Origin: Octopus sinensis
Lineage: Eukaryota
DNA length: 64,000 bases
Assembly: GCF_006345805.1 (NCBI RefSeq)
Contig: NW_021836134.1
Span: 310,001-374,000, forward strand
Reading direction: 5' to 3'
Part shown: positions 1 to 40,852 of the stretch, one piece after another
Position numbering within the stretch: position 1 is the stretch's first letter
Layout: each line of letters starts with the position of its first letter
Position numbers and translations under genes: made by a program
Notes under the pieces: model-generated
The model's input: the letters and a program-made list of their open reading frames with translations, nothing else
The model's database searches: none
What the model was told of the DNA's origin: nothing

Positions 1-45
1 AGCATAATTTTATATTTTTTATTATTTTTTATTTACACGTGTTTG

Positions 46-16268: not shown

Positions 16269-16712
16269 AATGATCAAATTAGGAATGCAAAGTCATGTGG
16301 ACAGTATATAATACACATTATTTGGGAACATTCTTCAAATCATTAAAGGTAAACAAATGTGTGTAGTAAGTGAGTACCATTAGTAGTCCAACTCTGTCCC
16401 AATAACTGGTTATCCAGCATGCGGTCTGTTCAGGACTTCTAAGTGAATACTCAAAAAGTATTAGACAGGAGAGTACTTCCCGACATGAAGACGAGGGACT
16501 TGATTAAGTTAATTTCCTAAAATATTGTATTGCCTAAGGAAATGAAAAACTATGATCAACCTCTTTTAGCCAGATATTTAGTACTAGCTCAGCAGTTCGC
16601 TTCGCTCACTGCGAGCTAGCTCCTGCGGAGGCCCTGCTCGCTACGCTCGCAGTTTCCTTAAATAACTATAAATTTATGTAGATATATAAATGCGACCTGC
16701 TTTGATATAACC

Positions 16713-19700
16713 TTATTCTAAGGCCTGTGGATAAACGATGTTTGCAGTCCGTCCATCCTTGGCAAATATAAATAAATTTTCTCTTCTACCTACCCTTGAG
16801 CACCCCACATACAGCTGGCCATGTGAAAAGCACTCGTTCTCTAAAAATAAGCCTACTACCTTTAAAGACTGTCCCTGGGCCTTGTTTATTGTCATAGCAA
16901 AACTTATCTTCAGCGGAAATTGTAGTCTCTTAAATCTAAAAGGTAATTCTTCCGAAATCAGAGGTATTCGTGGGATATAAACATCCTCACCTCTGTAATT
17001 ACCTGTTAATATTGTCGCTTCTATTACGTTAGCCATCAAATTCTTGATAACCAACCTTGTACCATTGCATAATTTAGGTGGCGCAAGATTGCGGAGTAAC
17101 ACAACCGGTACACCTATTTTTAATTTCAATAGATGATTCGGCATTCCAGATGGATCTAAGGAATTTAAAAATTCTACAGGATATTCGCAGGCCCTTTCAT
17201 GGTCCATAATAACGTCGACCGATTTATATATTCTTTCTCTGCCAGGGATTTTCATTAATAAATCTAAATTTATATTAAGTACCTCATCATTAAGTGGAGC
17301 TAATATAGCTCGTTCACGCAGCCAGTCGAAATTCACGTAGTGTTCAGATAGTTCGGAATAGACGGCATTCAATAATTCTTCTGCTGTTTCTACGAAAATA
17401 CATAATTCTTCCGGTAGCCTAATTTTCTGGTCTTGCATTTCTGAAGTGATTGCCCCATTTCCAATATCTAGAAGGATTTGTGGGAATATGCTATTAACGC
17501 CTTGTAAATGTGCACGTACATTTACATCTAAGCTTACCTTTTTCACGTGTGTCCACAAATATGACGATTTGAGGCAGGCATTCAATTCATCCGCAGGCGG
17601 CCCTCTTTGAATAATTGGCAGCGTCTGTCTAAAATCACCTGCCAATACAACTATTGCTCCCCCAAATAAATGGTCGCTACAATTCTTGATATCTCTATAT
17701 GTTCGATCAACTGCTTCGAATGCGCCTTTATGAGCCATCGTACATTCATCCCAAACAATTAACCTAGAATGCATAATTCTATTACCCGTAGTTGAATTTT
17801 TTTTTACATTACAAACCGGTTCAGTAGTATATGAGAGATTCAACGGAATGTTGAATGTCGAATGTGCGGTTCGACCGCCATCTAAAAGAGTTGCAGCAAT
17901 TCCAGAAGATGCAACTGCTAAAGCTAGTTTATTTTCGCTTCTGACCTTAGCTAATAATAGATTTAGAAGATAGGTCTTACCTGTTCCACCCGGTGCATCA
18001 ATAAAAATGATAGAACCGTTTTCTTCTTGGATGACTCGATTAATTTCTCTGTATACCTCCAACTGGCCAGTGGTTAAGCTTTGTTCTCTTTCTTCCACTA
18101 TTGTTCGAAGTTCTTCTAAATTATAATGCTCATCAAATGAATTAATATTATGAATATCGCTGATTATAAAACCAAATTCACCTATACTCTTACCAACGAT
18201 AGATATTAGCAATCTATCTATCATGATTAATCCAATGTTGAAAATCTCTGCATCGAAACTCAATCTATTCTTCTCTCTTAATATATCTTCACACATGCTT
18301 TCTCGGTGACCTTCCCACAGTTGTTGTGGATTTGCTAACCCACAATGGGCTAGCATCAAAGTAAATAAATACCTTAGTCGCGATGGGGAATCTGCAAGTT
18401 CAGCTTCTGTTAAAGTCTGATTCCAGTGATTATCATCCTCTAAAAGACCTAATTTAAAACAGGCTTCTCTGTATGTTTCGCAGAGTACTCCATCTACAGT
18501 CCGTAGATCAGTGAAAGATTCTGGCCCTCGTACGGTGTGCAAAAGTAACCTAACACAATAACATTCAAAATTATTTGGATGCACTGTATATACTCTACCC
18601 AATGCATCTGCACTTACAATTCCTGAATGTCCATTTACTGGATTTCCTCTTATCCTTCTCTTAAATCTCTTCCCCGCGACATCCCATGTATAATATCTAG
18701 GAACATCAACATAATATATAGTCTTTGCAAATTGATCTGTACGACATAATTCGAAGAATGCCATCAGAGTTGAATTTCTTGCATTTGTAACTTGATTGCG
18801 TGCATTCTGCTCTGTGAAATAAATTCTTTGCCCATTTTCCAGGTGAACCCCTAAATGCATAACCAATGGATATCTTTCATGAATCGGATATCCAAAAATT
18901 CTCCATGCTCCTTCATTACTGCAGATATAGCGTCCATGTTGATAAAAAGTTGGCTCATCACGTTGCTCTATTGAAAAGATTGCCTGATCTGACCCTTTAT
19001 TAATGTACTTACATACATATTTAATTGATCTAATTGAATTACAAAATTCCACATTGATATGTGCATCAAAAATCTTACTTAATAGTGGATTATAAGGCAC
19101 TATCCATCTGTTATCAACTGTTATTTCATTTTCTTTTCCTTCGTGGAGGGTTGCAGTATATCCTCCTTCAGCTGCTCCCCTTCTCTGGTAAAATGGAAAT
19201 CCATTTTCACCTGTTTGCGTGTTAATTATTAAGTTTTTTGGGTACCCTTTAGAACACTTACCATCTTGCATACACGGTGATGATCTGTTATATATGCCAC
19301 ACGGACCATGTATCATATTTCTTTTGATGATCTCGTATAATTCTCTATCTTCATTTGGATTTGGCAATTCTGCCCGTATGCAATCGTCTATCTCTGTAGG
19401 CCTAATTTTAGTTACTAACCATACTAATATATGTATATGTGGTAAACCTCTTTTTTGCCACTCTACTGTATACATGTGGCATCTTGTCTTCCCAAAAATC
19501 TGTCCCTTGCATAGAAGATCAATCATCTTATCGACTTTTTGTTTAAAAACACGTGCTATGATGTCTTGTCTATACTCGACCTTTTGTCCTACAAATATGT
19601 TATCACTAATTTCTGGCCATTTCGGATTACACGTAAAAGTGATAAACAGATCCGGAGTTCCGTAATTTCTAACGTATGTCATAGCATCTTGAGTTCGCTC

Positions 19701-21980
19701 ATGCATATATCTTGGTCCTCCCGTGAATGACGAAGGCAAAATAACCATTTGACCTACATTAGACACATTACCGTCATTCATTATGGCATCTCTTAGATGT
19801 ATATACTCTTCTGCTCTCAGTTTCCGCTGATTCAACCGAATGTAGAGAAGTCTCTCTGCCTCTATTTTCGCATACATATCTACAATAAACTGATTAAATA
19901 ACTGGCCTGTACGATGTAGAATGTTGAATTCCTGCTCTCTTATCATCAACCTATAAGAATAAAATTCCATACAACTGGTTTTTTTAGTAGTAGTTAAACC
20001 AGTCGACGGATTAAAATGCATTACCTTAAAATTGTACCCATCCTCTCCTCTCGGAAATAATAATGGGTACTGAAGTGCATCATATGACCGATGTGTCTCT
20101 GAAATTCTCATTAATCCAGTGGATCTCTTGTTTATTATTATGTCTCTCGAGTCATAGTGTTGACCTACTATTAGAATTCCAACCTGGTTTGACGTTGGTG
20201 CGTTGTATCGACGGCTATGTTCATTTGCAGGTGTCCTATCTGCATGTATAATTACCTTACAATCTTCATCTGCTGTGGATCTCAGAACAGATCTAAAAGA
20301 TGAAATATACGTGTTGCACATTTGCAACATATTTTGCAACGAACTAATAATGTTGCCTCGTAGTCTTGAATCTGCTAGACATCTTCGGTTAGATTGTTCT
20401 TCGTGATTATCTATAAAGTAAATTTGTAAAAATTTAAAATCCTCGCCTTCACTTGGAAGGAGTGAACCCATCCTGTGATACACTTGCCCAAGTACCTTAA
20501 ATGTGGGCATATAGCCCGTCGGATTGAAATTTCCACTTGTACCAAAAGATGTCATCTGAAAAACATTATTGTACCTGCGAATATTATCAACGAAGTGCCT
20601 AGATGATGGTGTATCATTCCTCAACAGTGTTAAAAGAGGCTCAGGAGGCGGGTCTAAAACTGGTAAACGTACCTTTCCGCGACTGCAGCACATTCCGATA
20701 GTTTCCCCCTTAAATTTCATAGCTAAACAAAAAGTACATATCTCCGTTAAAGCACCTACATTACCTAAATTTCTATACTCAATGCCCCTATTATAATTAA
20801 ATCCAGTGTTTTCTAAACCAATAGAATTTGATACCCTACTATTCCTGCGTGAAACTCGTAGTCGATTTTCTGTCTGATGTTCATCCTGAGTTAGTTGGTT
20901 CCTCCTAACTGAATTTCTTCTTGTGTTCCGATCTCGTCGGCATTCCCTTTGTTGTTGTGACTCTTGTTCCCTACTAATAGCCGTTGCCATTCTATCTTGT
21001 TCTTGCCTATGTTCCCTCTGTTCTTGAGTCTCTTGTTCCCTACTAATAGCCGTTGCCATTCTATCTTGTTCTTGCCTATGTTCCCTCTGTTCTTGAGTCT
21101 CTTTTTCCCTACTAATAGCAGTTCCCATTCTATTTTGCTCTTGCCTATGTTCCCTTTGTTCTTCTGTCTCTTGTTCCCTACTAATAGCCGTTGCCATTCT
21201 ATCTTGTTCTTGTCTATGTTCCCTTTGTTGTTGTGACTCTTGTTCCCTACTAATAGCCGTTGCCATTCTATCTTGTTCTTGCCTATGTTCCCTCTGTTCT
21301 TGAGTCTCTTGTTCCCTACTAATAGCCGTTGCCATTCTATCTTGTTCTTGCCTATGTTCCCTCTGTTCTTGAGTCTCTTTTTCCCTACTAATAGCAGTTC
21401 CCATTCTATTTTGCTCTTGCCTATGTTCCCTTTGTTCTTCTGTCTCTTGTTCCCTACTAATAGCCGTTGCCATTCTATCTTGTTCTTGTCTATGTTCCCT
21501 CTGTTCTTGTGACTCTTGTTCCCTACTAATAGCCGTTGCCATTCTATCTTGTTCTTGTCTATGTTCCCTCTGTTCTTGTGACTCTTGTTCCCTACTAATA
21601 GCCTTCCCCATTCTATCTTGTTCCTGCCTATGTTCCCTCTGTTCTTGTGACTCTTGTTCCCTACTAATAGCCTTCCCCATTCTATCTTGTTCTTGTCTAT
21701 GTTCCCTCTGTTCTTGTGACTCTTGTTCCCTAGTAATAGCCTTCCCCATTCTATCTTGTTCTTTTCTGAAATTCCTCATATCATCGGTCTCTTGCCTCCT
21801 TCTTATAGTTGCTCTTAATCTGTTGCATTCTTGTCGATGTTCCTTTTGATCTTGTGACTCGGCTGCCCTTTTCATAGCCATGCGCAATCTATTCTTTTCT
21901 CGTCTAAAATTTGAGATCGAAAACGTCTCATTTGAACTATTTACTTTAATGTTAAATTTATTATCTAGACTAACACTCAT
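16713..21980 (-). CDS. Helitron Rep/helicase (HUH endonuclease + PIF1-like SF1 helicase), 1755 aa, intronless
   Basis: Rep motifs DLFITFTCNPKW, EWQKRGLPHIH and KYVCKYINKG; helicase motifs DAPGGTGKT, WDEC, GDFRQ, TINKAQGQSL and HGQLYVGCSRV. Confidence 0.97.
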   Translation of the reverse strand: MSVSLDNKFNIKVNSSNETFSISNFRREKNRLRMAMKRAAESQDQKEHRQECNRLRATIRRRQETDDMRNFRKEQDRMGKAITREQESQEQREHRQEQDRMGKAISREQESQEQREHRQEQDRMGKAISREQESQEQREHRQEQDRMATAISREQESQEQREHRQEQDRMATAISREQETEEQREHRQEQNRMGTAISREKETQEQREHRQEQDRMATAISREQETQEQREHRQEQDRMATAISREQESQQQREHRQEQDRMATAISREQETEEQREHRQEQNRMGTAISREKETQEQREHRQEQDRMATAISREQETQEQREHRQEQDRMATAISREQESQQQRECRRDRNTRRNSVRRNQLTQDEHQTENRLRVSRRNSRVSNSIGLENTGFNYNRGIEYRNLGNVGALTEICTFCLAMKFKGETIGMCCSRGKVRLPVLDPPPEPLLTLLRNDTPSSRHFVDNIRRYNNVFQMTSFGTSGNFNPTGYMPTFKVLGQVYHRMGSLLPSEGEDFKFLQIYFIDNHEEQSNRRCLADSRLRGNIISSLQNMLQMCNTYISSFRSVLRSTADEDCKVIIHADRTPANEHSRRYNAPTSNQVGILIVGQHYDSRDIIINKRSTGLMRISETHRSYDALQYPLLFPRGEDGYNFKVMHFNPSTGLTTTKKTSCMEFYSYRLMIREQEFNILHRTGQLFNQFIVDMYAKIEAERLLYIRLNQRKLRAEEYIHLRDAIMNDGNVSNVGQMVILPSSFTGGPRYMHERTQDAMTYVRNYGTPDLFITFTCNPKWPEISDNIFVGQKVEYRQDIIARVFKQKVDKMIDLLCKGQIFGKTRCHMYTVEWQKRGLPHIHILVWLVTKIRPTEIDDCIRAELPNPNEDRELYEIIKRNMIHGPCGIYNRSSPCMQDGKCSKGYPKNLIINTQTGENGFPFYQRRGAAEGGYTATLHEGKENEITVDNRWIVPYNPLLSKIFDAHINVEFCNSIRSIKYVCKYINKGSDQAIFSIEQRDEPTFYQHGRYICSNEGAWRIFGYPIHERYPLVMHLGVHLENGQRIYFTEQNARNQVTNARNSTLMAFFELCRTDQFAKTIYYVDVPRYYTWDVAGKRFKRRIRGNPVNGHSGIVSADALGRVYTVHPNNFECYCVRLLLHTVRGPESFTDLRTVDGVLCETYREACFKLGLLEDDNHWNQTLTEAELADSPSRLRYLFTLMLAHCGLANPQQLWEGHRESMCEDILREKNRLSFDAEIFNIGLIMIDRLLISIVGKSIGEFGFIISDIHNINSFDEHYNLEELRTIVEEREQSLTTGQLEVYREINRVIQEENGSIIFIDAPGGTGKTYLLNLLLAKVRSENKLALAVASSGIAATLLDGGRTAHSTFNIPLNLSYTTEPVCNVKKNSTTGNRIMHSRLIVWDECTMAHKGAFEAVDRTYRDIKNCSDHLFGGAIVVLAGDFRQTLPIIQRGPPADELNACLKSSYLWTHVKKVSLDVNVRAHLQGVNSIFPQILLDIGNGAITSEMQDQKIRLPEELCIFVETAEELLNAVYSELSEHYVNFDWLRERAILAPLNDEVLNINLDLLMKIPGRERIYKSVDVIMDHERACEYPVEFLNSLDPSGMPNHLLKLKIGVPVVLLRNLAPPKLCNGTRLVIKNLMANVIEATILTGNYRGEDVYIPRIPLISEELPFRFKRLQFPLKISFAMTINKAQGQSLKVVGLFLENECFSHGQLYVGCSRVGRRENLFIFAKDGRTANIVYPQALE
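20950..21770 (-). repeat. Coding 69-bp tandem repeat (~12 x 23 aa) with 276-bp higher-order duplication
   Basis: Unit QESQEQREHRQEQDRMATAISRE. Units 5-8 recur as units 9-12 (near-identical antisense ORFs at 20964 and 21240, offset 276). Confidence 0.95.
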
Positions 21981-22049
21981 ATCATCGAAACTATATCGTT
22001 TAAATTATTATTTCCTACACTAACTTTTTTACGTTTCGTGCTACATAAA

Positions 22050-22442
22050 TTATCTAAAACCTGTGTATTTTCCAAATATTCTTTGTTTCTCAATAGGTAA
22101 TCCGTTTCCATACACTAAAAATAAATCTAATATTAATACCTCTTTACTGAAGTTATTTTCATCGAAACGGATCGATTGATGATCTTCTGACAACCGATGA
22201 GTAATCTTATTTTCTCTGACATTACATAAGCCTACACTACCTACATTTCCTGCACCTAGATTACCTACGCATGCACCTACACTACCTACACTCCCTGCGC
22301 CCACATTTCCTGCATTTCCTACACCTATATTACCTATGCCCGCACCTACATTACTTACACTCCCCCCAAGCTCAGTTTGTTCGTTTGTTTTAGCATCCAC
22401 GATATCTTCGGTGAAACTCTCCATATTCTGACTACCCACCAT
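22050..22442 (-). CDS. Small Gly/Val/Asn-rich ORF upstream of RepHel (accessory ORF or detached 5' exon)
   Basis: 130-aa ORF with NVGAG/SVG repeats, same strand, stop ~70 bp before the RepHel ATG. No homology recognised. Confidence 0.35.
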   Translation of the reverse strand: MVGSQNMESFTEDIVDAKTNEQTELGGSVSNVGAGIGNIGVGNAGNVGAGSVGSVGACVGNLGAGNVGSVGLCNVRENKITHRLSEDHQSIRFDENNFSKEVLILDLFLVYGNGLPIEKQRIFGKYTGFR

Positions 22443-22492
22443 ACTAATCTTATTTTTTACGCCACGCAGTAATACATATTGAACATTTAACG

Positions 22493-22685
22493 CTCTTAAG
22501 CCTTGTCTTATCTTAATTGCTATCTGAAGTGGTTTGTCTAATCAAGGTCACTAAGCCTATTTCCGTAAACTGTAAAGGGCTCTTAAGCCTTATCTTAATT
22601 GCTATCTGAAGTGGTTTGTCTAATCAAGGTCACTAAGCTAAATTTCCGGAAACTGTAAAGGGCTCTTAAGCATTATCTTAATAGG
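22493..22685. repeat. ~85-bp tandem repeat x2.2 (also ~35790-35985)
   Basis: ctcttaagcc(ttgtc)ttatcttaattgctatctgaagtggtttgtctaatcaaggtcactaag... starts at 22493, 22580 and 22663. Confidence 0.85.
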
Positions 22686-22889
22686 CTGTTAAAAAATTGA
22701 CAGGTTGTTAAAGATAAGTGAAAATAAGAATTAATCTAATTTTAATTCAAAGTAAATAATTTTTAAGTGAAAATAAGAATCAATTAAGAGATCCAGCTCG
22801 ATCTGCGTGCTCGACGGGGCAGGGGTTAGAGCCCAGCAGTACGGTTGCTTCCGCGTTCCGCGCACGGTTTGTTGAAGTGTGCACACACG

Positions 22890-23557
22890 GCGGCAGACAA
22901 ATTTTTAAAGTTTTTTTGTTATTTTCTTTTTTTTATTTTTAAAATTTTTTTTTTTATTTTATGAATTTTTTTTTGTGTGTTTTATTTTTTTTTATTTTTT
23001 GTTTTTTATTGTGTTTTTATTTTATTTTTTATATTTTTTTTCTTTTTTTGTGTTTTATTTTCTTTTTTTTATTTAAATTTTTTGTTTTATTTTTTAATTT
23101 TTTTCTTTTTTGGTGTTTTAGTTTCTTTTTTTATTTAAATTTTTTGTTTTATTTTTTAATTTTTTTCTTTTTTGGTGTTTTAGTTTCTTTTTTTATTTAA
23201 ATTTTTTGTTTTATTTTTAATTTTTTTCTTTTTTGGTGTTTTAGTTTCTTTTTTTTATTTAAATTTTTTGTTTATTTTTAATTTTTTTCTTTTTTTGTGT
23301 TTATTTTCTTTTTTTTATTTTTTAACTTTTTTTTATTTTTTATTTTTTGTTTTTATTTTCTTAGTTTTTTTTTTTTTTGTGTTTTATTTTTTTTTTAACT
23401 TTTTTTTATTTTTTAATTTTTTTTTGTTTTTTTTCTTTTTTTTGATTTTTTTTGGGTTTTATTTTTTTTTTATTTTGTTTAAATTTTTTTATTTTATGTT
23501 TTAAATTTTTTTCTTTTTTTATTTTTTAACTTTTTTGTATTTTTTGATTTTTTTTTT
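22890..23557. repeat. Strand-biased T-rich (A-rich on minus) low-complexity tract with ~62-bp internal repeats; counterpart 36196-36969
   Basis: Very T-rich on plus strand; unit ending ...ggtgttttagtttct is repeated; tract length differs between the two copies. Confidence 0.9.
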
Positions 23558-23685
23558 AGAATAGAATAGAATAGAATAGTGTTTATTGAGCGAAAAGAAA
23601 AAGAAAAACAAGGAAGAAAAACATCGGCGGGGAGATAAAAACAAGGCACCGAAGTGTCTCTTTCCATGCGTATCCCCAATACTAG

Positions 23686-26283
23686 TCATGTTTGACGACA
23701 ATTCTCCAAGACCATCCGGATCGTGGGCACAGAGGATTCTTGTGAGTCTTTTAGCCTTCCGTCAAGTTGTACTCCGTAAGCCAATTTCATAGCGAAACGT
23801 CTTGTCTTTTCCAACTGTTCGATCAGGTAGTCACTCTCCTCCGTACCGTACCAGCCCTCGTAGCCATATGTGAGGACTGGCTGCACACACGTTTTGTATA
23901 CGTAGATGTACGTTTCCGGATCCAGATGGAACCTGGTTAAGCTTTTGAGGATCCTCACACTCCTCTTTCTCTGATTTGCTATATGCTCTACGTACGAGCC
24001 ACGACAGTTAATGGTTGCTCCCAGGTAAGAAAGATTTTTTCTTTTCGAGAGATCCATCACATAGCTACTCATCGCATATGCACAAGACTCCGCATAGCGA
24101 CTCCCTCTCCGCAACCATGAAATGGTGCTCTTCTCCGGTGCTAGGGTCAAACCCTTCTCTATAGTCCACATCTTTAGCGTTGCAATGTATGATTTCAGTC
24201 GTCTCCAAGACTGCGATATCCTTTTCGAGGTATCCATGACCAGGATATCGTCAGCATAGATAACGAGCTTGCCAGTACGTGTCGACGGCAGAGGAATGTC
24301 CGCCAAGAAGAGGTTGAACAGAAGTGGACTCAAGATAGATCCCTGCGGGACTCCCCTTCTAAGTTCCACACACCCCGATAGGCGGTTTCCACAGCGGACA
24401 AATGATTGTCTTCCTGACAAGAAGCTCTCCAGCCATCGATAGGTCTTTATCCCGGCTCCGATGTCATGGATTCTGGAGAGTAGGCCCAGGTGCCACACGC
24501 TATCGAAGGCTTTGGCCAGATCCAGACACACCACAGTTAGCCATGCTTCATTTCTGTCAGCACGGGATAATTGGTGCTCTAACTCCCTGAGGCAGTCCCC
24601 TGTGGATCTTCCTCCACGAAATCCCCATTGTTCAGGTAAAAGCAAATTTTGTGATTCTATATGACCAGAGAGTCTGTTAAAGACAATCTTTTCCATTGTC
24701 TTAGAGAAAGCACAAATGAGGCTAATTGGCCGGTAGTTCTGTGCCAGCAGTGTCGATTTACCAGATTTTGGAATCATTCGAACAATCGTATGCTTCCACG
24801 CCGATGGAAGGTGTCCGAACGTCCAGCTGGCGTGAAACAACATAGTCAATGCTCGTATCAAGATTTCAGGGGCCTTCTTTAACAACTTCGGAGGGATGTA
24901 GTCGAAGCCAGGCGCCTTGTTCTTCAACCCAGCAATTGCCCTTTCAACCTCTTCCTGTGTTATCGCCCCACATAATGGTCCCTCCGATAATTGCGAAGAG
25001 CCAAGCTTCTTCACAATTCGGTCATAAGTCCCTCGTGGAACGGTAGATTCGACCTCTTGAACCTTACTCAGTTGGTTCCTGAGTACTTCCGGGATACGAT
25101 CAGAGGAGATATATTTCCCGTCTGGTTCTTTTAGTGAAATTTCAAATCCTTTGGCATCATTTCTGGTAAGGCGTTGATATGCTTTCCAGAAATTAGGGTT
25201 TCGCTTATCCAGTTTTCTGCATTCAGACCTCCATTTACTTTCGACCTCAGTCTTGGCCATTTTTGCAATAGTAGATTTTATCTTGTCGATCTCCAATTTC
25301 AGGCGGCATTTGATTGACTCAACCCGACATCTTCTCCTGCGATTTTCCAGGGTACCTTTCGTTCTGATCAGAGTGACAAGTTTCGAATTCATCCGCTTTT
25401 GCGTTCCTTTGGGTTTCCATACATTTTTTAATGCATAAACATCCAGGAATTTTATGATTGACGATCTAAGGTGATCATCGAGATTGTCAATATCATCTCT
25501 GCTTCTCAGAGGCTGGGACACGACATTTCGAAGAGAATCCCGCATATATGATTCGAATAAACTCCAGTTCATGTTCACGAGGTTGTAACCAATGAACAAG
25601 TCCTCCGTAACATTCATAGTCATCTTTATCAACATCGTTTGCGGCACGTGGTCAGAGCCAATGTCCGCTTCCAACCTCGGTATGTAACATAAAGGACTAA
25701 TTGATGCCGAGCATAGAAAGAGACCCAAGCGATCAGCCCTGCCTCTGTCTGCATAATGATTCAGTTCTTCCGATGTAAAGACCGAAAAACCCAAGCTACT
25801 GGCCAAGTCCTCAAGGACAGTTCCATCCATATTCGTAGTTTCACATCCATAACTCACATTTTTGGCATTAAGATCTCCTGCTAGGATTGACAGGCAATTT
25901 TCCTCAAAGAACGTCCCAATAACGTTTGAATAGCGCCTTAGCGACTTTGAGTACATTCCCCCGACGGTTAGCCAGCCAGCAGTCGTGTGCAGCTCGAGCA
26001 CAATAAGTTCACAGAGTGACTCCTCCACAATTCTGATGTTTCTTACCTTAAGGTTCGCCCTGTAGTAGACTGAGGTTCCTGTCCCCGCCACTGAGTTTAT
26101 TTTCCATGGTATATTAATAGACTTATAGCCTTCGAATTCCACCCTCGTAGCTTCCTTCAGCTTAGTCTCATTGATAATCAATATGTGAGACTTCGCTGTG
26201 GCCAGCAGGAGCCTCAGCTCCGATGCCCGTCTCGCAAGCGAGCGGGCATTTAGAATTGTCAGAGCAAGGAATCCTTCCGACAT
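23686..26283 (-). CDS. LINE ORF2: APE endonuclease + reverse transcriptase (865 aa)
   Basis: LNARS, INET, GDLNAK and SDH (APE); KAPGFD, YRPISL, QWGFR, LDLAKAFDSV, GVPQGSILSPLLF and YADD (RT). No RNase H recognised. Confidence 0.95.
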   Translation of the reverse strand: MSEGFLALTILNARSLARRASELRLLLATAKSHILIINETKLKEATRVEFEGYKSINIPWKINSVAGTGTSVYYRANLKVRNIRIVEESLCELIVLELHTTAGWLTVGGMYSKSLRRYSNVIGTFFEENCLSILAGDLNAKNVSYGCETTNMDGTVLEDLASSLGFSVFTSEELNHYADRGRADRLGLFLCSASISPLCYIPRLEADIGSDHVPQTMLIKMTMNVTEDLFIGYNLVNMNWSLFESYMRDSLRNVVSQPLRSRDDIDNLDDHLRSSIIKFLDVYALKNVWKPKGTQKRMNSKLVTLIRTKGTLENRRRRCRVESIKCRLKLEIDKIKSTIAKMAKTEVESKWRSECRKLDKRNPNFWKAYQRLTRNDAKGFEISLKEPDGKYISSDRIPEVLRNQLSKVQEVESTVPRGTYDRIVKKLGSSQLSEGPLCGAITQEEVERAIAGLKNKAPGFDYIPPKLLKKAPEILIRALTMLFHASWTFGHLPSAWKHTIVRMIPKSGKSTLLAQNYRPISLICAFSKTMEKIVFNRLSGHIESQNLLLPEQWGFRGGRSTGDCLRELEHQLSRADRNEAWLTVVCLDLAKAFDSVWHLGLLSRIHDIGAGIKTYRWLESFLSGRQSFVRCGNRLSGCVELRRGVPQGSILSPLLFNLFLADIPLPSTRTGKLVIYADDILVMDTSKRISQSWRRLKSYIATLKMWTIEKGLTLAPEKSTISWLRRGSRYAESCAYAMSSYVMDLSKRKNLSYLGATINCRGSYVEHIANQRKRSVRILKSLTRFHLDPETYIYVYKTCVQPVLTYGYEGWYGTEESDYLIEQLEKTRRFAMKLAYGVQLDGRLKDSQESSVPTIRMVLENCRQT

Positions 26284-27440
26284 GGGTGGCTGACCTCCCG
26301 TGGGAGCGCCACCTTTTTCGGTAAAGGGGGTCTGCCTGCTTTCCGTTTGCCACCGGTTTCAGCCGGCTCTGGAGGCGTCCCATCGTCCTCCAGCCGGGCT
26401 TCAGGGCTTGGCAGCTGAACTCCAGATTTTGCTACTGCAGTTTTCTTCACTGCTCTCGCCTTCGGGGCGGCGGGTTTTGTTTCTGGGCATGGGTCCGTTT
26501 GAATTCCCGTGTTAATGAAGCAGGTCTGACTTCCGGATTCGATCAAGTTCTTGACGATAACGTCAGTTTGAACACCAATATCGCATTTCGGATTAAGTAA
26601 CTTCTTCGACCAAGACATTTGTATGCCAGACATTTGTATTGCATTTACACGATTTCTCTTAGTGGGAGTCACTTCCAGTTTCTTCTTTGTCGATTGTTTC
26701 GCCACCGGACAGCCCAACCAGTTCGCCCGGTGTCCATGTGATCCGCAGTTGATGCACGGGAGTTTGACGTGTGTTCCGATCGTACATTGGGTGCGATCGT
26801 GTGCATCACCACACAACAAACAGCGCACTGTCTCTTTACAGTATAACGAGATGTGTCCAAATTTGTAACATCGATAGCATTGCCTCTCGGGATTTTTGTA
26901 CCAGGTAAAACGGATTTGGTTGAAGCCAATTTTAAGACCTAGGGTGATCAACGACTGTGCTTCGTTTCTGTCCTGGATAGTAAGCTTGCCAAGTGGCAGA
27001 TTTTTCCCATTTTTACTAAATCTTTCCAGTTTGAACCCTGGGGATAGCACTTTCGACAAAAGCCTGTGTAGATCCTCGTTATCAACCCAAAAAGGTAGAT
27101 TCCTCATCATTAAGGTCGAATCCCTGGGTGTTCGGTGCTCTATTGTGTGCCCATTGTCACCAAAAGGAAGCTTCATTTCCCAATCGTTTTTAAAAGACTC
27201 GAAATCCCGTTCCGAATTAAAGACAAGTTCGTATGAGCCATCAAAGCGACGGGAGATTCTCGCCTTGAGGGCAGTTTTCGAATTACAGATGATGTTGGCA
27301 ACCTCAATTGAATCAAAAGAGGTGTTTGACACACGTACAATTATCGACACTTTCCGATTTTCTTTTTCTTGTTTGAAATTAACATTAATTTTGCTATTTT
27401 CAATTTTGCTATTTGCACAACCAGAAACGAAACGCACCAT
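26259..27440 (-). CDS. LINE ORF1 (gag-like, three zinc knuckles, 393 aa)
   Basis: CYRCYKFGHISLYC, CLLCGDAHDRTQC, CINCGSHGHRANWLGC. Confidence 0.92.
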   Translation of the reverse strand: MVRFVSGCANSKIENSKINVNFKQEKENRKVSIIVRVSNTSFDSIEVANIICNSKTALKARISRRFDGSYELVFNSERDFESFKNDWEMKLPFGDNGHTIEHRTPRDSTLMMRNLPFWVDNEDLHRLLSKVLSPGFKLERFSKNGKNLPLGKLTIQDRNEAQSLITLGLKIGFNQIRFTWYKNPERQCYRCYKFGHISLYCKETVRCLLCGDAHDRTQCTIGTHVKLPCINCGSHGHRANWLGCPVAKQSTKKKLEVTPTKRNRVNAIQMSGIQMSWSKKLLNPKCDIGVQTDVIVKNLIESGSQTCFINTGIQTDPCPETKPAAPKARAVKKTAVAKSGVQLPSPEARLEDDGTPPEPAETGGKRKAGRPPLPKKVALPREVSHPCRKDSLL

Positions 27441-27444
27441 GCTT

Positions 27445-28205
27445 TCCTTTTTTTATTTTTCGATTTTTTGTTTTTTATTTTCTTTTTTTGTCTTTTGCGG
27501 TGTTTTATTTTATTTTTGATTTTTTAACTTTTTTTTGATTTTTTTCTTATTTTTTTGTTTTTTTATTGTGTTTTTATTTTTTAATTTTTTTTATTTTTTG
27601 ATTTTTTAACTTTTTTTTGAATTTTTCTTATTTTGTTTTTTATTGTGTTTTTATTTTCTTTTTTATTTTTTTAATTTTTTTTTCCTTTTTCATTTATTTT
27701 TTAAATTTTTTTTTTATTTTTGAATTTTTTTTGTTTTTATTTTTTATTTTTTGTTTTTTTTATTTTTTGTTTTTTTTGTGTTTTTTATTTTTTTATTCTT
27801 TTTTTTGTGTTTTATTTTCTTTTTTGATTTTTTTGTTTTATTTTCTTTTTTTATTTTTTAGTTTTTTAATTTTTTGATTTTTATTGTGTTTTTATTTATT
27901 TTTTTATTTTTTAAAAGTTTTTTTATTTTTTAATTTTTTTTTATTGTTAATTTTTTTATTTTTAAATTTTTTTTTATTTTTAAATTTTTTTTTATTTTTA
28001 ATTTTTTTTCTTTTTTTGTCTTTTAGTTTCTTTTTTTTATTTATTAAGTTTTTTTTTTCTTTTTTTGTTATTTCTTTTTAATTTTTTAAGTTTTTTTCTT
28101 TTTTTTTATTTTCTTTTTTTGGGCTTTATTTCTTTTTTTTATTTGTTAACTTTTTATATTTGATTTTTTCGTGTTTCTTTGTAATTTCCTTTTTTTTCTT
28201 TTTTT
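27445..28205. repeat. Second strand-biased T-rich tract (5' of LINE); counterpart ~40857-41625
   Basis: Same composition and polarity as 22890-23557. Confidence 0.9.
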
Positions 28206-28233
28206 ATTTGGGTGAGATGGGGGAAATGCGGAA

Positions 28234-28580
28234 ATGCGGCAGGCAGAGATGCGGCAGGCGGAAATGCGGCAGGCAGAGATGCGGCAGGCAGAGATGCGGC
28301 AGGCAGAGATGCGGCAGGCAGAGATGCGGCAGGCAGAGATGCGGCAGGTAGAGATGCGGCAGGCAAGAAAGCGACAGGCAAGAAAGCGACAGGCAAGAAA
28401 GCGACAGGCAAGAAAGCGACAGGCAAGAAAGCGACAGGCAAGAAAGCGACAGGCAAGAAAGCGACAGGCAAGAAAGCGACAGGCAAGAAAGCGACAGGCA
28501 AGAAAGCGACACATAAAAAAGCGACAGGCAAGAAAGCGACACACAAAAAAGCGACAGGCAAGAAAGCGACACACAAAAAA
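28234..28580. repeat. 15-bp minisatellite, ~23 units, polarised variants (counterpart ~41640-42002, ~24 units)
   Basis: gcggcaggcagagat block, then gcgacaggcaagaaa block, then gcgacac(a/t)aaaaaa variants. Confidence 0.95.
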
Positions 28581-28629
28581 GATTTGATTAATTACCTTAT
28601 TAAGCTGACCGTTTTTTCTTCAGCTTCGT

Positions 28630-29080
28630 TTTTCCTCCTTCGGTTATCTATTAAAAAAATTATTTTTGAATAATAAAAAAGTTTAGGATAAGAGGCATAC
28701 CGAAAATAAATTCTATCTTTACGAAAAACTTCTTTTCTTAAGGTCGTCTTCCCTCCTTCGGTTATCTATTGAAAAAATTATTTTTGAATAATAAAAAAGT
28801 TTAGGAAAAGAGGCATACCGAAAATAAATTCTATCTTTACGAAAACTTAACTAAATAGTTAATATTTTTACGCAAATTCTTCTGATTGCGCTGTCAATGG
28901 GTGGTAAATGTGTTAATGATTGTCCTAATGTGGTTTCAACTATCAAAGTGTTTTTCAAAATCTGTTAATTGCACACTCTATTCAGGTCGTGCGTCAATTT
29001 GTGGTAAATTGTGTTAATGATTGTGCTAATTGGTTTCAACTATCAAAGTGGTTTTTCAAAATCTGTTAATTGCACACTCT
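28630..29080. repeat. Two pairs of direct repeats (~130 bp x2; ~100 bp x2) in the Helitron 5' region
   Basis: ccttcggttatctatt...gaggcataccgaaaataaattctatctttacgaaaa occurs twice; tgtgttaatgattgt...aaaatctgttaattgcacactctat occurs twice. Confidence 0.85.
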
Positions 29081-29267
29081 ATGATAATAGCTTTAATTTT
29101 GATTCATGGTCGTTAATGATATATGCATTTAATTTTAAAGAGAAAAATAGGATGAATTGAATTTCTTTATCGCGAATAATTGGGAGTTCATCATTGTTAA
29201 TATTCTCGCTGTCGTTTTCATCAAGGATATTCTTAATACGTGAGATTTTTGCCTGGAAAGTTTTAAT

Positions 29268-29770
29268 GGACCTCATCATGAATGTCGAGGACATCGTAGT
29301 TATTCATTTTAACCAAAATGCAGAAAATTTTTTTTTAATTTTTTTGGGGGGGAAGGTTTTAAGGACCTCATCATGTAAGTCGAGGACATCGTAGTTGTTC
29401 ATTTTAACCAAAATGCAGAAAATTTTTTTTTGATTTTTTTGGGGGGAAGGTTTTAAGGACCTCATCATGTAAGTCGAGGACATCGTAGTTATTCATTTTA
29501 ACCAAAATGCAGAAAATTTTTTTTAATTTTTTTGGGGGAAGGTTTTAAGGACCTCATCATGTAAGTCGAGGACATCGTAGTTGTTCATTTTAACCAAAAT
29601 GCAGAAAATTTTTTTTTAATTTTTTTGGGGGGGAAGGTTTTAAGGACCTCATCATGTAAGTCGAGGACATCGTAGTTGTTCATTTTGACCAAAACGCAGA
29701 AAAATTTTTTTTAATTTTTTTTGGGGGAAGGTTTTAAGGACCTCATCATGTAAGTCGAGGACATCGTATT
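29268..29770. repeat. ~94-bp tandem repeat, 5 full units + partial (counterpart ~42696-43200)
   Basis: ggacctcatcatg starts at 29268, 29363, 29457, 29549, 29644 and 29738; ttattc/ttgttc variants alternate in the first four units. Confidence 0.95.
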
Positions 29771-29789
29771 GCCAATTTGAAGTTGGTGT

Positions 29790-29855
29790 GCACACACAGA
29801 CAGACAGACAGACAGACAGACACACAGACAGACAGACAGACAGACAGACACACAC
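29790..29855. repeat. (CAGA)n / (TCTG)n microsatellite just inside the Helitron 5' end (also ~43225-43290)
   Basis: Directly visible; a subterminal microsatellite of this kind is known from several invertebrate Helitrons. Confidence 0.95.
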
Positions 29856-32800
29856 CATACCATTTTATTATTAAGATTTGTTGCTAAGTTATCCAAACTT
29901 TGTTTACCTAAAATTTAGAAAAACTTTTTTAACATAGTAATAACATAATAAACTAACCACGTGATCCCGATTCACTTCACAAAGGACCTCATCTTTCACG
30001 GTAATCTTCCCACTAGTCACAAAAAATCGGAACGAATGAATGGTTGGTTGCAAGGACATAGCCCGGCAATCTGAAGTTCAGCTTAATCAGATTTTCCAAA
30101 CGAGCCGCCCCGGAACCTTTGTTTCCATTTGACCAATGTTTGGCTTATTTGCACGCCCTTAATTGAGCCTTCTCGGTTTTCCTCCTGTTTGATAAATAAG
30201 GTTCCCGTAAACCACAAGCATAGGAAAAACATGGTTTGATGTATTGAAGATATATGTTTTTGAAGACCGGGTGAGAACTACTCTTCCATAATCCCAATAA
30301 GGTTTCAACAAGTTCATTTATTTTTCGCATTTCATAAGTATTTTATCTAAATTTTGAGAAAAGCAGAAATCTATATCATTACTCACTTGTAAAATCCTCT
30401 GCATTTTTCACTGTTTTCTTATTGTCTCCTGAATCTTAGGCATAATCTCAAGATTTTAAAAAATGTAAATCATTAGCTGAATAAGCGAGAACTCTTTTTT
30501 TCATTCAAAAGTCGGAACGAAGATCCAATAAATGCAAAAATTGGTAATAAAAAATCACCTTAGTTAAGTTAGTTAATTAATCCACTTTTGCGCTACCAAT
30601 TGATCGTTAGCGTCCTTCAATCAACCCCTGATGACAGCATAATCCTCCGAAAGTGTCTTGGGAAGACATCCTTCTGGACGTCCTTTATAAGTTGGATATT
30701 CAAAAAATCACGTTTGAGGACATTATTTTCTTAACATTTCGATTCGGAAATCTATATTTATTTCAAATGTAAATAAAATTTCAAACAAATTCAATTTTGA
30801 AATTCCATTATAAAAAGTTTATTTACAAAAACAAAAATAAGAATTAGTAGGAATTTAAATCAAGAAAATTTGGTGTGTATCTTCTGCTTGTTTCAACAAA
30901 TTTAGATACAGCATTAATTTATACGTCAATTTCATAGGTTATCAATTAAAAAAAGTACTGAGATTTTAAACATTTTAACTAAATGAGTTCAAAATTTCGA
31001 AAAATTATTTCTGAGCTGATAACGGTATGTTTGAAGTTTTACAAAATATCAAATCAACAAATAATATTCCTTGTGTTCATTAATATTTTCAAAGTTTTAT
31101 GCTACTATAAAATCAGAGATGAAATCAGTGTACGATTTAACAACAACTGGATATTTAATTGCAAATTAAGCATGGATTGCTGAATCAAAAAAAGTTCAGA
31201 TGATTGTTGAAGGAAAAACGAGTTATTACAAACTTGCGGGAAATGCTATGTCAAAAACATTGAGGATGTTGGCAGTAGCTATCGCTGAAATTAACTCTGC
31301 TTTAAAGGAGATCCAAATGGCATTCGAAATTGTCTAAGCTCAAGGTTTATCAGGACTTTTCCGTTTTTACATTTTTCGATGGGTTCTTCGGACAGGATTA
31401 GGAAACAATCTCTTCCGATGCTGTTTCAGTAAAAACCACATTTTTAGAGGTCTCTCTTTATGGATTCCATTCGTTTTGTTGTAGATTAGTTTAATAGTTG
31501 AGTGGTTTGTTTTTTTGACTATTCAGGAGGTTTTTAGAAAAAAGTTAAGATTTAGAATCAATAATGTGCAAAGAGAATAAATTGACTGTTTTTAGGAAAA
31601 TGGCAATTGAAATTCTTTGTAGGAATCATGATGATTCACTTTGCTCACATTTACGCGAAGAAATCCTACTTCTGAGGTCATAGATAAAATTTCCTGCATC
31701 TCCAAAGACTTCAACTAAGACGGGAGCAAAAAATGATGATATGAGAGAGTTTGATATTTGTCGATTTTCACACGCTCCCTGCGTGCGCAAGGAATACGGC
31801 CGAAGAGATAATTTTCAACACAAAAAACTTGCCTTTGTAGATCGCATCCCACACAAGTGACATACCTTTTTAGAATAGGAAGATTGTCTTTTGTCATCAC
31901 CTCAATGATAACTATAAACTATTCTTCATTATTTATTTTTACTGGAGAATTCGTACTTATTAAGTTTAATATCAAATGAATTTTCTCTTCAATACGAAGA
32001 AAAAAAAATTGACTGAGAACCTAATCATTTAAGAGTTTCAGTAATTTGTCTTTAAGAAACTAAGCTCAACAAGGATTTCGATGAGATTATCTTAGTTTAA
32101 TATTTTATTTATTTGGGTTAACAATACTCAATTTAACTATCATTAATTGATGTTTCTTCATATAAGACAACTACTCCGCAGACCGATCACGTCTCGACAC
32201 CTCTCCTAATATTATTGTAGTAAGAAAGCCGACTCCTCTGACAGGTCAACTGACACTCGAAATTACTCTTTCCTAACGATAAGATTATTTTCTTCTTCCG
32301 CAATTTGTTGTTGTCAACCTTAATGCAATGCATGGATAGCGATCATGCTTGCCAACGTTTCTTGATTGTCACTAATTGGATGTATCCATTAGTCCAGATA
32401 TTTAATTTTTTATGTAGGACTATAACTTGTTCACTATTCTATCCCATGTAAATACGACAAGGACTATTGTGACTGTGCCAAATTGTCCAGCAAGTAGATT
32501 ATACTTGTAAAATTTATCTACTTCGACTTGCTTTAAGTTGTCTTTAAATGTAAACACGACTTCAAATATTGTTATCTAATTTTATATTTTATGAAACACT
32601 TGTTTTCAAGGCCATGTCTACTTTCGTGTCAACAGGACTATTTCCCACGATCACTAACCTACCTAAATAATACATATAAATCTCATGTCTTTTTAACTGG
32701 AGGAATTTCCAGTCCTGATTGATGCGATTCTTAAATGAGACCACCACATTAGTTCACTGCTTTATTAACATGACTATTTCTAAGAAAATTCATTAGGTAG

Positions 32801-35573: not shown

Positions 35574-37097
35574 ACCTACACTACCTACACTCCCTGCGCC
35601 CACATTTCCTGCATTTCCTACACCTATATTACCTATGCCCGCACCTACATTACTTACACTCCCCCCAAGCTCAGTTTGTTCGTTTGTTTTAGCATCCACG
35701 ATATCTTCGGTGAAACTCTCCATATTCTGACTACCCACCATACTAATCTTATTTTTTACGCCACGCAGTAATACATATTGAACATTTAACGCTCTTAAGC
35801 CTTGTCTTATCTTAATTGCTATCTGAAGTGGTTTGTCTAATCAAGGTCACTAAGCCTAATTTCCGTAAACTGTAAAGGGCTCTTAAGCCTTATCTTAATT
35901 GCTATCTGAAGTGGTTTGTCTAATCAAGGTCACTAAGCTAAATTTCCGGAAACTGTAAAGGGCTCTTAAGCATTATCTTAATAGGCTGTTAAAAAATTGA
36001 CAGGTTGTTAAAGATAAGTGAAAATAAGAATTAATCTAATTTTAATTCAAAGTAAATAATTTTTAAGTGAAAATAAGAATCAATTAAGAGATCCAGCTCG
36101 ATCTGCGTGCTCGACGGGGCAGGGGTTAGAGCCCAGCAGTACGGTTGCTTCCGCGTTCCGCGCACGGTTTGTTGAAGTGTGCACACACGGCGGCAGACAA
36201 ATTTTTAAAGTTTTTTTGTTATTTTCTTTTTTTTATTTTTAAAAATTTTTTTTTTATTTTATGAATTTTTTTTTGTGTGTTTTATTTTTTTTTATTTTTT
36301 GTTTTTTATTGTGTTTTTATTTTATTTTTTATATTTTTTTTCTTTTTTTGTGTTTTATTTTCTTTTTTTTATTTAAATTTTTTGTTTTATTTTTTAATTT
36401 TTTTCTTTTTTGGTGTTTTAGTTTCTTTTTTTTATTTAAATTTTTTGTTTTATTTTTTAATTTTTTTCTTTTTTGGTGTTTTAGTTTCTTTTTTTTATTT
36501 AAATTTTTTGTTTTATTTTTTAATTTTTTTCTTTTTTGGTGTTTTAGTTTCTTTTTTTTATTTAAATTTTTTGTTTTATTTTTTAATTTTTTTCTTTTTT
36601 TGTGTTTTATTTTCTTTTTTTTTTATTTTTTAACTTTTTTTTTTATTTTTTTTTTTTTGTTTTTATTTTCTTATTTTTTGATTTTTTTGTGTTTTATTTT
36701 TTTTAACTTTTTTTTTATTTTTTAATTTTTTTTGTTTTTATTTTCTTATTTTTTGATTTTTTTGGGTTTTATTTTCTTTTTTTATGTTTTAAATTTTTTT
36801 TATTTTATGTTTTAAATTTTTTTTCTTTTTTTTATTTTTAACTTTTTTTGTATTTTTTGATTTTTTTTGTTTTTTATTTTCTTAGTTTTTGCTTTTTTGT
36901 GTTTTTATTTTCTTTTTTTATTTTTAAAATTTTTTTTCTTTTTTTTTGTGTTTTATTTTTCCTTTTTTTAGAATAGAATAGAATAGAATAGTGTTTATTG
37001 AGCGAAAAGAAAAAGAAAAACAAGGAAGAAAAACATCGGCGGGGAGATAAAAACAAGGCACCGAAGTGTCTCTTTCCATGCGTATCCCCAATACTAG

Positions 37098-39695: not shown

Positions 39696-40852
39696 GGGTG
39701 GCTGACCTCCCGTGGGAGCGCCACCTTTTTCGGTAAAGGGGGTCTGCCTGCTTTCCGTTTGCCACCGGTTTCAGCCGGCTCTGGAGGCGTCCCATCGTCC
39801 TCCAGCCGGGCTTCAGGGCTTGGCAGCTGAACTCCAGATTTTGCTACTGCAGTTTTCTTCACTGCTCTCGCCTTCGGGGCGGCGGGTTTTGTTTCTGGGC
39901 ATGGGTCCGTTTGAATTCCCGTGTTAATGAAGCAGGTCTGACTTCCGGATTCGATCAAGTTCTTGACGATAACGTCAGTTTGAACACCAATATCGCATTT
40001 CGGATTAAGTAACTTCTTCGACCAAGACATTTGTATGCCAGACATTTGTATTGCATTTACACGATTTCTCTTAGTGGGAGTCACTTCCAGTTTCTTCTTT
40101 GTCGATTGTTTCGCCACCGGACAGCCCAACCAGTTCGCCCGGTGTCCATGTGATCCGCAGTTGATGCACGGGAGTTTGACGTGTGTTCCGATCGTACATT
40201 GGGTGCGATCGTGTGCATCACCACACAACAAACAGCGCACTGTCTCTTTACAGTATAACGAGATGTGTCCAAATTTGTAACATCGATAGCATTGCCTCTC
40301 GGGATTTTTGTACCAGGTAAAACGGATTTGGTTGAAGCCAATTTTAAGACCTAGGGTGATCAACGACTGTGCTTCGTTTCTGTCCTGGATAGTAAGCTTG
40401 CCAAGTGGCAGATTTTTCCCATTTTTACTAAATCTTTCCAGTTTGAACCCTGGGGATAGCACTTTCGACAAAAGCCTGTGTAGATCCTCGTTATCAACCC
40501 AAAAAGGTAGATTCCTCATCATTAAGGTCGAATCCCTGGGTGTTCGGTGCTCTATTGTGTGCCCATTGTCACCAAAAGGAAGCTTCATTTCCCAATCGTT
40601 TTTAAAAGACTCGAAATCCCGTTCCGAATTAAAGACAAGTTCGTATGAGCCATCAAAGCGACGGGAGATTCTCGCCTTGAGGGCAGTTTTCGAATTACAG
40701 ATGATGTTGGCAACCTCAATTGAATCAAAAGAGGTGTTTGACACACGTACAATTATCGACACTTTCCGATTTTCTTTTTCTTGTTTGAAATTAACATTAA
40801 TTTTGCTATTTTCAATTTTGCTATTTGCACAACCAGAAACGAAACGCACCAT
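39671..40852 (-). CDS. LINE ORF1, copy 2
   Basis: 393-aa translation matches 26259-27440. Confidence 0.92.
   Translation of the reverse strand: MVRFVSGCANSKIENSKINVNFKQEKENRKVSIIVRVSNTSFDSIEVANIICNSKTALKARISRRFDGSYELVFNSERDFESFKNDWEMKLPFGDNGHTIEHRTPRDSTLMMRNLPFWVDNEDLHRLLSKVLSPGFKLERFSKNGKNLPLGKLTIQDRNEAQSLITLGLKIGFNQIRFTWYKNPERQCYRCYKFGHISLYCKETVRCLLCGDAHDRTQCTIGTHVKLPCINCGSHGHRANWLGCPVAKQSTKKKLEVTPTKRNRVNAIQMSGIQMSWSKKLLNPKCDIGVQTDVIVKNLIESGSQTCFINTGIQTDPCPETKPAAPKARAVKKTAVAKSGVQLPSPEARLEDDGTPPEPAETGGKRKAGRPPLPKKVALPREVSHPCRKDSLL

What the first reader, a model, noticed from the sequence alone, without database searches (positions are those of the whole stretch)
16584..29876. Complete autonomous Helitron carrying a two-ORF LINE as cargo, with its empty site in the same window
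Seen: TC...CTAG termini, A|T insertion without TSD, uninterrupted RepHel, and the pre-insertion site intact at 1400/1401. Inside sits a LINE with open ORF1 and ORF2. Established: Helitrons move by rolling-circle replication and capture cargo. Inference: this composite could move a retrotransposon by a DNA rolling-circle route, making the LINE a passenger rather than an independent mover.
Basis: partly seen in the sequence, partly recalled or inferred. Interest (0 to 1): 0.8.

Follow-up and report, generated by a model that had tools for sequence, protein, structure and literature searches.

The report
Young Helitron with a nested LINE
A real, intact rolling-circle transposon (Helitron) in an octopus genome has a complete LINE retrotransposon inside it, but the LINE jumped into this one copy on its own, so this is an ordinary nested insertion and not a Helitron that carries LINEs around.

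Summary
Window 16584-29876 (minus strand) is a complete canonical Helitron. It has a 5' TC and a 3' CTAG end, sits between A and T without a target duplication, and has an open 1755-aa Rep/PIF1-helicase frame. A paralogous empty site lies at 1400/1401. The same termini and A|T rule recur at seven or more other loci, and at least 40 copies share an identical 3' end, so the family is young.

The LINE (23558-27440, 3883 bp) has a CCHC gag-like ORF1, an APE+RT ORF2 and a (TATTC)n tail. It belongs to a young dispersed family of mostly 5'-truncated copies with target duplications in unrelated DNA. In the Helitron it sits full-length in an A-rich minisatellite and is flanked by a 12-bp duplication.

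The LINE/Helitron junction sequences occur nowhere else in the 2.7-Gb assembly. Four other Helitron copies carry the same internal site without the LINE, and two more with both ends lack it. The second LINE-bearing copy in the window (35574-43309) comes from a 13.3-kb tandem segmental duplication, not from transposition.

Verdict: one-off nested insertion; co-mobilisation is possible in principle but unsupported. Earlier notes of this scan had already reported LINEs inside other Helitrons of this genome.

The parts
16584..29876 (-). Composite element, 13,293 bp: a canonical Helitron with a nested LINE
1400..1401 (.). Paralogous empty site (AGTA|TTTG) in an older segmental duplicate, 95-96% identical in the flanks
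16584..16660 (-). Helitron 3' end: subterminal palindrome (stem CTGCGAGC..GCTCGCAG) and terminal CTAG. The last 200 bp are 100% identical in at least 40 other places in the genome
16713..21980 (-). RepHel ORF, 1755 aa, uninterrupted. Helitron_like_N at aa 673-853, PIF1 helicase at aa 1302-1515, Pif1 2B domain at aa 1603-1648
20943..21906 (-). 69-bp tandem repeat inside the RepHel ORF, about 13 copies of a 23-aa unit (REQESQEQREHRQEQDRMATAIS)
22900..23557 (-). Helitron A-rich minisatellite, the part downstream of the LINE
23558..27440 (-). Full-length LINE, 3883 bp, with a 3' (TATTC)n tail. It is nested in the A-rich array of the Helitron
23686..26283 (-). LINE ORF2, 865 aa, with APE endonuclease and reverse transcriptase domains
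26259..27440 (-). LINE ORF1, 393 aa, gag-like, with three CCHC-type zinc knuckles. It overlaps ORF2 by 25 nt
27443..28209 (-). Helitron A-rich minisatellite, the part upstream of the LINE. It ends in AAAAAAAGGAAA(GC), one copy of the LINE target-site duplication
28231..29768 (-). Helitron 5' repeat-rich region: arrays of 15/30 bp, 118 bp, 101 bp and 95 bp (5.5 copies)
29792..29876 (-). Helitron 5' end: TCTTAATAATAAAATGG followed by a (CTGT)n microsatellite
35574..43309 (-). Duplicate of the 5' 7.6 kb of the composite (equivalent to w22275-29876). It includes an identical LINE at 36970-40852. It lacks RepHel and the 3' end and shares the same right flank, so it is part of a 13.3-kb tandem segmental duplication (22275-35573 / 35574-48787)

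Best explanation
A young, autonomous canonical Helitron inserted between A and T into one unit of an older segmental duplication. The family has hundreds of near-identical 3' ends and at least two open RepHel frames in the genome.

At this locus, a full-length copy of a young dispersed LINE then retrotransposed into the Helitron's internal A-rich minisatellite by target-primed reverse transcription. The LINE has an APE+RT ORF2, a CCHC gag-like ORF1 and a (TATTC)n tail. The insertion made a 12-bp target-site duplication.

Afterwards a 13.3-kb tandem duplication copied the 5' 7.6 kb of the composite, LINE included, together with 5.7 kb of host flank.

Shown: the anatomy, the termini, the unique junctions, the LINE-free sister copies, the free LINE copies, and the duplicated second copy.

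Inferred: the order of events, and that the LINE arrived after the Helitron had landed here.
For: Helitron:
- The TC...CTAG ends and A|T insertion are present here and at seven or more other loci with unrelated flanks.
- RepHel domains are present.
- At least 40 copies have a 100% identical 3' 200 bp, out of 557 candidates.
- A second open RepHel frame, 99% identical, lies at C12599.

The LINE is an independent mover:
- At least 40 3' ends are 98-100% identical, out of 237 candidates.
- Only 7 full-length 5' ends exist in the genome.
- The copies are 5'-truncated, share one 3' end, sit in diverse flanks and have TSDs of 7-13 bp.

The insertion is a one-off:
- The 5' junction 30-mer is found only at the two window copies.
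- Each 3' junction variant is unique.
- The 46-mer just upstream of the site occurs in four other Helitron copies (C2533, C8701, C9004, C9790) that lack the junction.
- The C9004 copy aligns continuously across the LINE site, 87% over 2794 bp.
- Copies C1794 and C12468 have both ends and no LINE.
- The TSD AAAAAAAGGAAA flanks the LINE in copy C.

The second copy in the window shares the same right flank and the same 5' junction, and its LINE shows 0 differences in 3883 bp.
Against: - Copy B, the one inside the complete Helitron, lacks the 3' TSD copy. About 100 bp next to the LINE's 3' end differ between B and C. I attribute this to slippage in the array but did not prove it.
- The genome searches score only the best candidates and skip simple repeats. 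The pattern searches allow at most 3 mismatches, so an older or unassembled composite copy could be missed.
- A donor copy that was excised, or that lies in unassembled heterochromatin, cannot be excluded.
- The host flank of the B/C duplicate is 2-4% diverged while the Helitron part is nearly identical. A simple recent duplication does not explain this.
Confidence: 0.88

Rival explanations
1. The composite moved as a unit. The LINE entered the Helitron at an earlier donor locus, and the 13.3-kb Helitron+LINE then transposed by rolling circle into this A|T site. The LINE would then be a true passenger.
For: The composite has intact termini and an open RepHel frame. The whole 13.3 kb is absent from the paralogous site as one block. 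Neither fact tells the order of events.
Against: No other locus in the assembly holds either LINE/Helitron junction. Sister copies with the same internal site are LINE-free. The LINE is 99-100% identical to free copies, so it is a very recent arrival.
Confidence: 0.05
2. The Helitron captured the LINE, as Helitrons capture gene fragments, by read-through or template switching during rolling-circle replication. It was not a retrotransposition into the Helitron.
For: Helitrons are known to capture host sequence (established knowledge). The LINE lies in the same orientation as RepHel.
Against: The LINE is complete from the family's own 5' end to its (TATTC)n 3' end, the same ends as in free copies. 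It is flanked by a 12-bp TSD of Helitron sequence. It interrupts an array that is continuous in a sister copy. These are marks of target-primed reverse transcription, not of capture.
Confidence: 0.02
3. The LINE family prefers this Helitron family's A/T-rich minisatellites as landing sites. LINE-in-Helitron composites would then be recurrent by targeting, not by co-mobilisation.
For: Four sampled copies sit in Helitron-type repeats. The window copy is in the A-rich array. L013 is in the 95-bp repeat of a short Helitron. L006 and L015 are in arrays of a related 95-bp satellite, near the A/T-rich part of the monomer. Earlier notes of this scan report other octopus LINEs stacked at fixed Helitron sites (unchecked here).
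Against: Most sampled copies lie in unrelated flanks. The sample is biased, because the query held both the Helitron and the LINE, so loci with both ranked first. The insertion points differ. A general preference of the endonuclease for A/T-rich DNA explains the pattern.
Confidence: 0.05

Closest known systems
Canonical (Helitron1-type) autonomous Helitrons of animals, such as Helibat/Helraiser and the recently active Helitron families reported in Octopus vulgaris (PMC13282606)
   Same: 5' TC and 3' CTAG ends, insertion between A and T without a TSD, a subterminal 3' palindrome, one large Rep + PIF1-helicase protein, and many shorter non-autonomous copies that share the ends.
   Different: The 5' third is packed with minisatellites (95, 101, 118 and 15/30 bp, plus 1.4 kb of A-rich arrays). 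The transposase carries about 13 tandem 23-aa repeats near its N-terminus. Neither feature changes the class.
Nested transposon insertions (a LINE inside a DNA transposon)
   Same: A full-length retrotransposon with its own TSD interrupts a host element. Sister copies of the host element are uninterrupted. Free copies of the guest element are common.
   Different: Nothing essential. Both partners are unusually young and have open frames, so the composite is in principle still mobile.
Helentrons (Helitron2-like elements with an APE endonuclease domain derived from a LINE)
   Same: An APE endonuclease coding sequence of LINE origin lies within the limits of a rolling-circle element.
   Different: Here the APE is part of a separate, complete LINE ORF2 with its own TSD. 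It is not fused to RepHel. The termini and target (TC...CTAG, A|T) are those of canonical Helitrons.
Helitron gene capture (maize and bat Helitrons)
   Same: Foreign sequence lies between Helitron ends.
   Different: Captured fragments spread with the Helitron and have no TSD. This LINE has a TSD and is present at a single locus.

Membership tests
Canonical Helitron | 5' TC and 3' CTRR termini | tested here: met
   TCTTAATAATAAAATGG...GCTGAGCTAG is conserved in the window copy and in copies on C12468, C1794, C12465, C10832, C9004, C12470 and C8713.
Canonical Helitron | Insertion between host A and T without a target-site duplication | tested here: met
   The empty paralogue reads AGTA|TTTG. 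T follows the 3' end in 8 of 8 copies checked. A precedes the 5' end in 6 of the 7 copies with a clean 5' end.
Canonical Helitron | Subterminal 3' hairpin | tested here: inconclusive
   A 12-13-bp stem is predicted about 24 nt from the end, but the fold is only modestly better than shuffles (z = -1.8).
Canonical Helitron | RepHel protein: HUH Rep domain plus PIF1-type helicase | tested here: met
   Helitron_like_N 2e-60, PIF1 1e-62 and Pif1_2B 5e-17 in one open 1755-aa frame.
Canonical Helitron | Multiple copies at unrelated sites | tested here: met
   At least 40 identical 3' ends out of 557 candidates; different flanks.
Helentron / Helitron2 | APE endonuclease fused to RepHel, with terminal inverted repeats | tested here: not met
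   RepHel has no endonuclease domain. The APE belongs to the LINE ORF2, which lies more than 1.7 kb away in its own element.
APE-type non-LTR retrotransposon (LINE) | ORF2 with APE endonuclease and reverse transcriptase | tested here: met
   Exo_endo_phos_2 2e-07 and RVT_1 2e-35. The nearest Atlas clusters are all APE+RT.
APE-type non-LTR retrotransposon (LINE) | 5'-truncated copies that share one 3' end, with variable TSDs | tested here: met
   Copies start at LINE positions 2 to 3501 and end at 3875-3883. TSDs of 7-13 bp were found in several.
APE-type non-LTR retrotransposon (LINE) | Clade assignment (Jockey/CR1/I group as against L1/Tx1 or RTE) | not tested
   There are only hints: three CCHC knuckles in ORF1 (Pfam zf-CCHC E = 0.05), a (TATTC)n tail, and the PF14529-type endonuclease. 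No phylogeny was made.
Helitron-captured cargo | The same insert at the same internal breakpoints in several independent Helitron insertions | tested here: not met
   The junctions are unique to this locus. Sister copies are LINE-free.

The most novel reading that the evidence does not exclude
Both partners have open frames and the Helitron ends are intact. The composite could therefore be a transposition-competent vehicle that will spread, or in unsampled individuals already has spread, a functional LINE by a DNA rolling-circle route. Alternatively, this Helitron family's A/T-rich minisatellites could act as preferred landing pads for octopus LINEs.
Probability: 0.08. Interest if true: 0.5.

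Novelty: new member of a known kind. Interest (0 to 1): 0.15.

Why it matters
It matters little beyond annotation. The locus documents a very young, probably still active autonomous Helitron family and a young LINE family in an octopus genome. It also gives a clean worked example of how to tell nesting from cargo: unique junctions, a TSD, and LINE-free sister copies. If the composite were ever found at a second A|T site, it would be a rare case of a retrotransposon moved as DNA. Nothing here indicates that this has happened.

Tried and rejected
- Second copy as independent event. I first took the second LINE-bearing copy (35574-43309) for an independent composite. I rejected this because it has the same right flank, lacks RepHel and the 3' end, and forms part of a 13.3-kb tandem duplication.
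- Independent site-specific insertion into B and C. I considered this because the two LINEs show 0 differences in 3883 bp while the overall B/C identity is 97%. I rejected it because the unique Helitron parts are also nearly identical (1 difference in 725 bp) and the 5' junction is identical.
- w22275 as the true Helitron 5' end. This point is a breakpoint in the tandem duplication and in the C1794 copy, and lies near a deletion joint in a contig of run X8. I rejected it because the C9004 copy runs continuously through that point (q6855-13293). The region is a short-motif repeat that is prone to rearrangement.
- Circle junction reads (CTAG joined to TC). This could not be tested. Only assembled contigs of public runs were on hand, and both ends of the 13.3-kb element do not fit into the 6,000 letters allowed.
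- Read laying. It gave no RNA evidence, because no listed run is on record as RNA. It showed only that the 3' 1.2 kb is far deeper than the RepHel body.
- Pfam on the RepHel N-terminus. No family matched aa 1-667, which includes the 23-aa repeat.
- Further flanks. The LINE-free state of C2533, C8701 and C9790 therefore rests on pattern presence and absence, not on alignment.
Full report
**Coordinates.** The element lies on the minus strand. I use window coordinates (w). Where that helps, I also use element coordinates, q = 29876 - w + 1.

**1.
- Read on the minus strand, the element begins TCTTAATAATAAAATGG at w29876 and ends ...GCTGAGCTAG at w16584.
- The host sequence on its two sides...CCAGATATTTAGTA and TTTGTTGCTAAGTTATC..., is contiguous at w1400/1401.
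- The flanks match that site at 96.4% over 278 bp and 95.1% over 471 bp. This is an insertion between A and T with no target duplication.
- The same 5' and 3' ends recur at seven or more other loci with unrelated flanks. T follows the 3' end at every copy checked, and A precedes the 5' end at nearly every one.
- The 5.3-kb ORF w21980-16713 is open for 1755 aa. It carries Helitron_like_N (2e-60), PIF1 helicase (1e-62) and the Pif1 2B domain.
- The last 200 bp are 100% identical at 40 or more other places, out of 557 candidates.
- A second open RepHel frame, 99% identical, lies on contig C12599.
- This is therefore a genuine, young, probably still active canonical Helitron family. A predicted palindrome lies about 24 nt from the 3' end, but it is only modestly better than shuffles.

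**2. The LINE.**
- w23558-27440 (3883 bp, same strand) holds a 393-aa ORF1 with three CCHC-type knuckles. It also holds an overlapping 865-aa ORF2 with APE endonuclease and reverse transcriptase domains (Atlas neighbours are all APE+RT).
- The LINE ends in (TATTC)n.
- A search of the whole 2.7-Gb assembly with the composite returned many copies of exactly this segment at 96-100% identity. They are 5'-truncated to different extents and share one 3' end.
- The 3' 226 bp has 40 or more copies at 98-100% identity, out of 237 candidates.
- Only seven full-length 5' ends exist in the genome.
- Flanks are diverse, and several copies show TSDs of 7-13 bp.
- It is an independent, recently active LINE family. 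I did not determine its clade. The features point to the Jockey/CR1/I group and away from L1/Tx1.

**3. Nested insertion, not cargo.**
- The LINE sits in an A-rich minisatellite of the Helitron (w22900-23557 and w27443-28209).
- A sister Helitron 5' region on C9004 aligns straight across the LINE site with the LINE-deleted element, at 87% over 2794 bp. The array was therefore continuous before the LINE came.
- In the duplicated copy C, the LINE is flanked by AAAAAAAGGAAA on both sides. This is the mark of target-primed reverse transcription.
- In copy B, about 100 bp next to the LINE's 3' end are missing, together with that repeat. The most likely cause is slippage in the array.
- The 30-mer across the 5' junction occurs only twice in the genome, both times in this window.
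- The two 3' junction variants occur once each.
- The 46-mer that ends 17 nt upstream of the LINE occurs at four other loci (C2533, C8701, C9004, C9790) that do not have the junction.
- Helitron copies with both ends on C1794 and C12468 also lack the LINE.

**4. The second copy in the window.**
- w35574-43309 repeats q1-7602 of the composite, including the LINE.
- It has the same right host flank, and it lacks RepHel and the Helitron 3' end.
- It is joined on its left to the host sequence that follows the first copy.
- The window thus holds a 13.3-kb tandem duplication (22275-35573 / 35574-48787).
- The two LINEs are identical, with 0 differences in 3883 bp. The unique Helitron parts are nearly so, yet the host part differs by 2-4%. 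I cannot explain this mosaic. Gene conversion with the third paralogue (w1123-12139) and an assembly problem are both possible.
- It does not bear on the main conclusion.

**5. Most likely history.**
- An older segmental duplication came first; its copies are now 4-5% diverged.
- The Helitron then inserted at A|T in one unit.
- The LINE then retrotransposed into the Helitron's A-rich array.
- The 13.3-kb tandem duplication came last.
- The order of the second and third steps is inferred from the absence of any donor with the same junctions.

**6. Comparison with known systems.**
- The Helitron meets the defining features of canonical Helitrons.
- It is not a Helentron, because the endonuclease belongs to the separate LINE.
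- Recently active Helitron families have been reported in Octopus vulgaris (PMC13282606).
- A retrotransposon nested in a DNA transposon is commonplace.
- Earlier notes of this scan on the same genome, which one of them names as Octopus sinensis, report other LINE families stacked inside other Helitrons, and expansion of this family's 69-bp coding repeat. I used these notes as leads only.

**7. Reads.**
- Only assembled contigs of public runs were available, and none is on record as RNA.
- They show the 3' 1.2 kb of the Helitron at much higher depth than the RepHel body, which fits many non-autonomous copies.
- They also show several internal-deletion joints.
- Circle junctions could not be tested.

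**Verdict.** The Helitron is real and well preserved. The LINE is a one-off nested insertion. Co-mobilisation remains possible in principle but has no support. Interest is low.

Noticed in passing
window 22275-35573 and 35574-48787; also 1123-12139: A 13.3-kb tandem duplication lies on top of an older segmental duplication of about 15.2 kb. Divergence between the two young units is a mosaic: 0 differences in 3883 bp in the LINE, about 0.1-0.5% in unique Helitron parts, and 2-4% in the host flank. Gene conversion among the three paralogues or an assembly artefact could explain it.
   Followed up: partly
window 29255-29768; L041 (C1351:1-9999), L042 (C12433:179000-188500): The Helitron's 95-bp 5' tandem repeat is about 80% identical to a free 95-bp satellite. 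That satellite forms arrays of several kilobases or more on unplaced contigs. This is a Helitron-satellite link of the kind known from bivalves and Drosophila.
   Followed up: partly
L006/L041, L015/L042, L013/L035: Three copies of the LINE family lie inside 95-bp repeat units, near the A/T-rich part of the monomer, each at a slightly different point. The sample is biased towards loci that hold both sequences, so no targeting can be claimed.
   Followed up: partly
window 20943-21906: The RepHel ORF holds about 13 in-frame tandem copies of a 69-bp unit coding for a 23-aa charged repeat. Pfam finds no family for it.
   Followed up: partly
window 22200-22370; L031 (C1794) local 6105-6109; run X8 joint 17759/22260: A short-motif repeat region (CCTACACTACCTACA...) is a recurrent breakpoint. 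It marks the start of the tandem duplication, a rearrangement junction in the C1794 copy, and an internal-deletion joint in a contig of another run.
   Followed up: partly
L034-L036 (C9004:229000-251000): A dense nest of this Helitron family. It contains an autonomous copy truncated at q6855 by an inverted short Helitron. That short Helitron itself holds a 5'-truncated LINE, and it in turn truncates a third copy.
   Followed up: partly
G000 C8750:80763-81926, C9004:150672-151520, C7755:783561 and 799388: Pairs of LINE 3' ends (or full-length 5' ends) lie on the same strand, 0.6-16 kb apart. They could be stacked insertions or local duplications. No sequence could be fetched to check.
   Followed up: no
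genome-wide: Nearly all young copies of this Helitron family and of this LINE family lie on small unplaced contigs (C8xxx-C12xxx). The chromosome-sized contigs hold only RepHel relatives of 46-56% identity. The families seem concentrated in poorly assembled, repeat-rich DNA.
   Followed up: no
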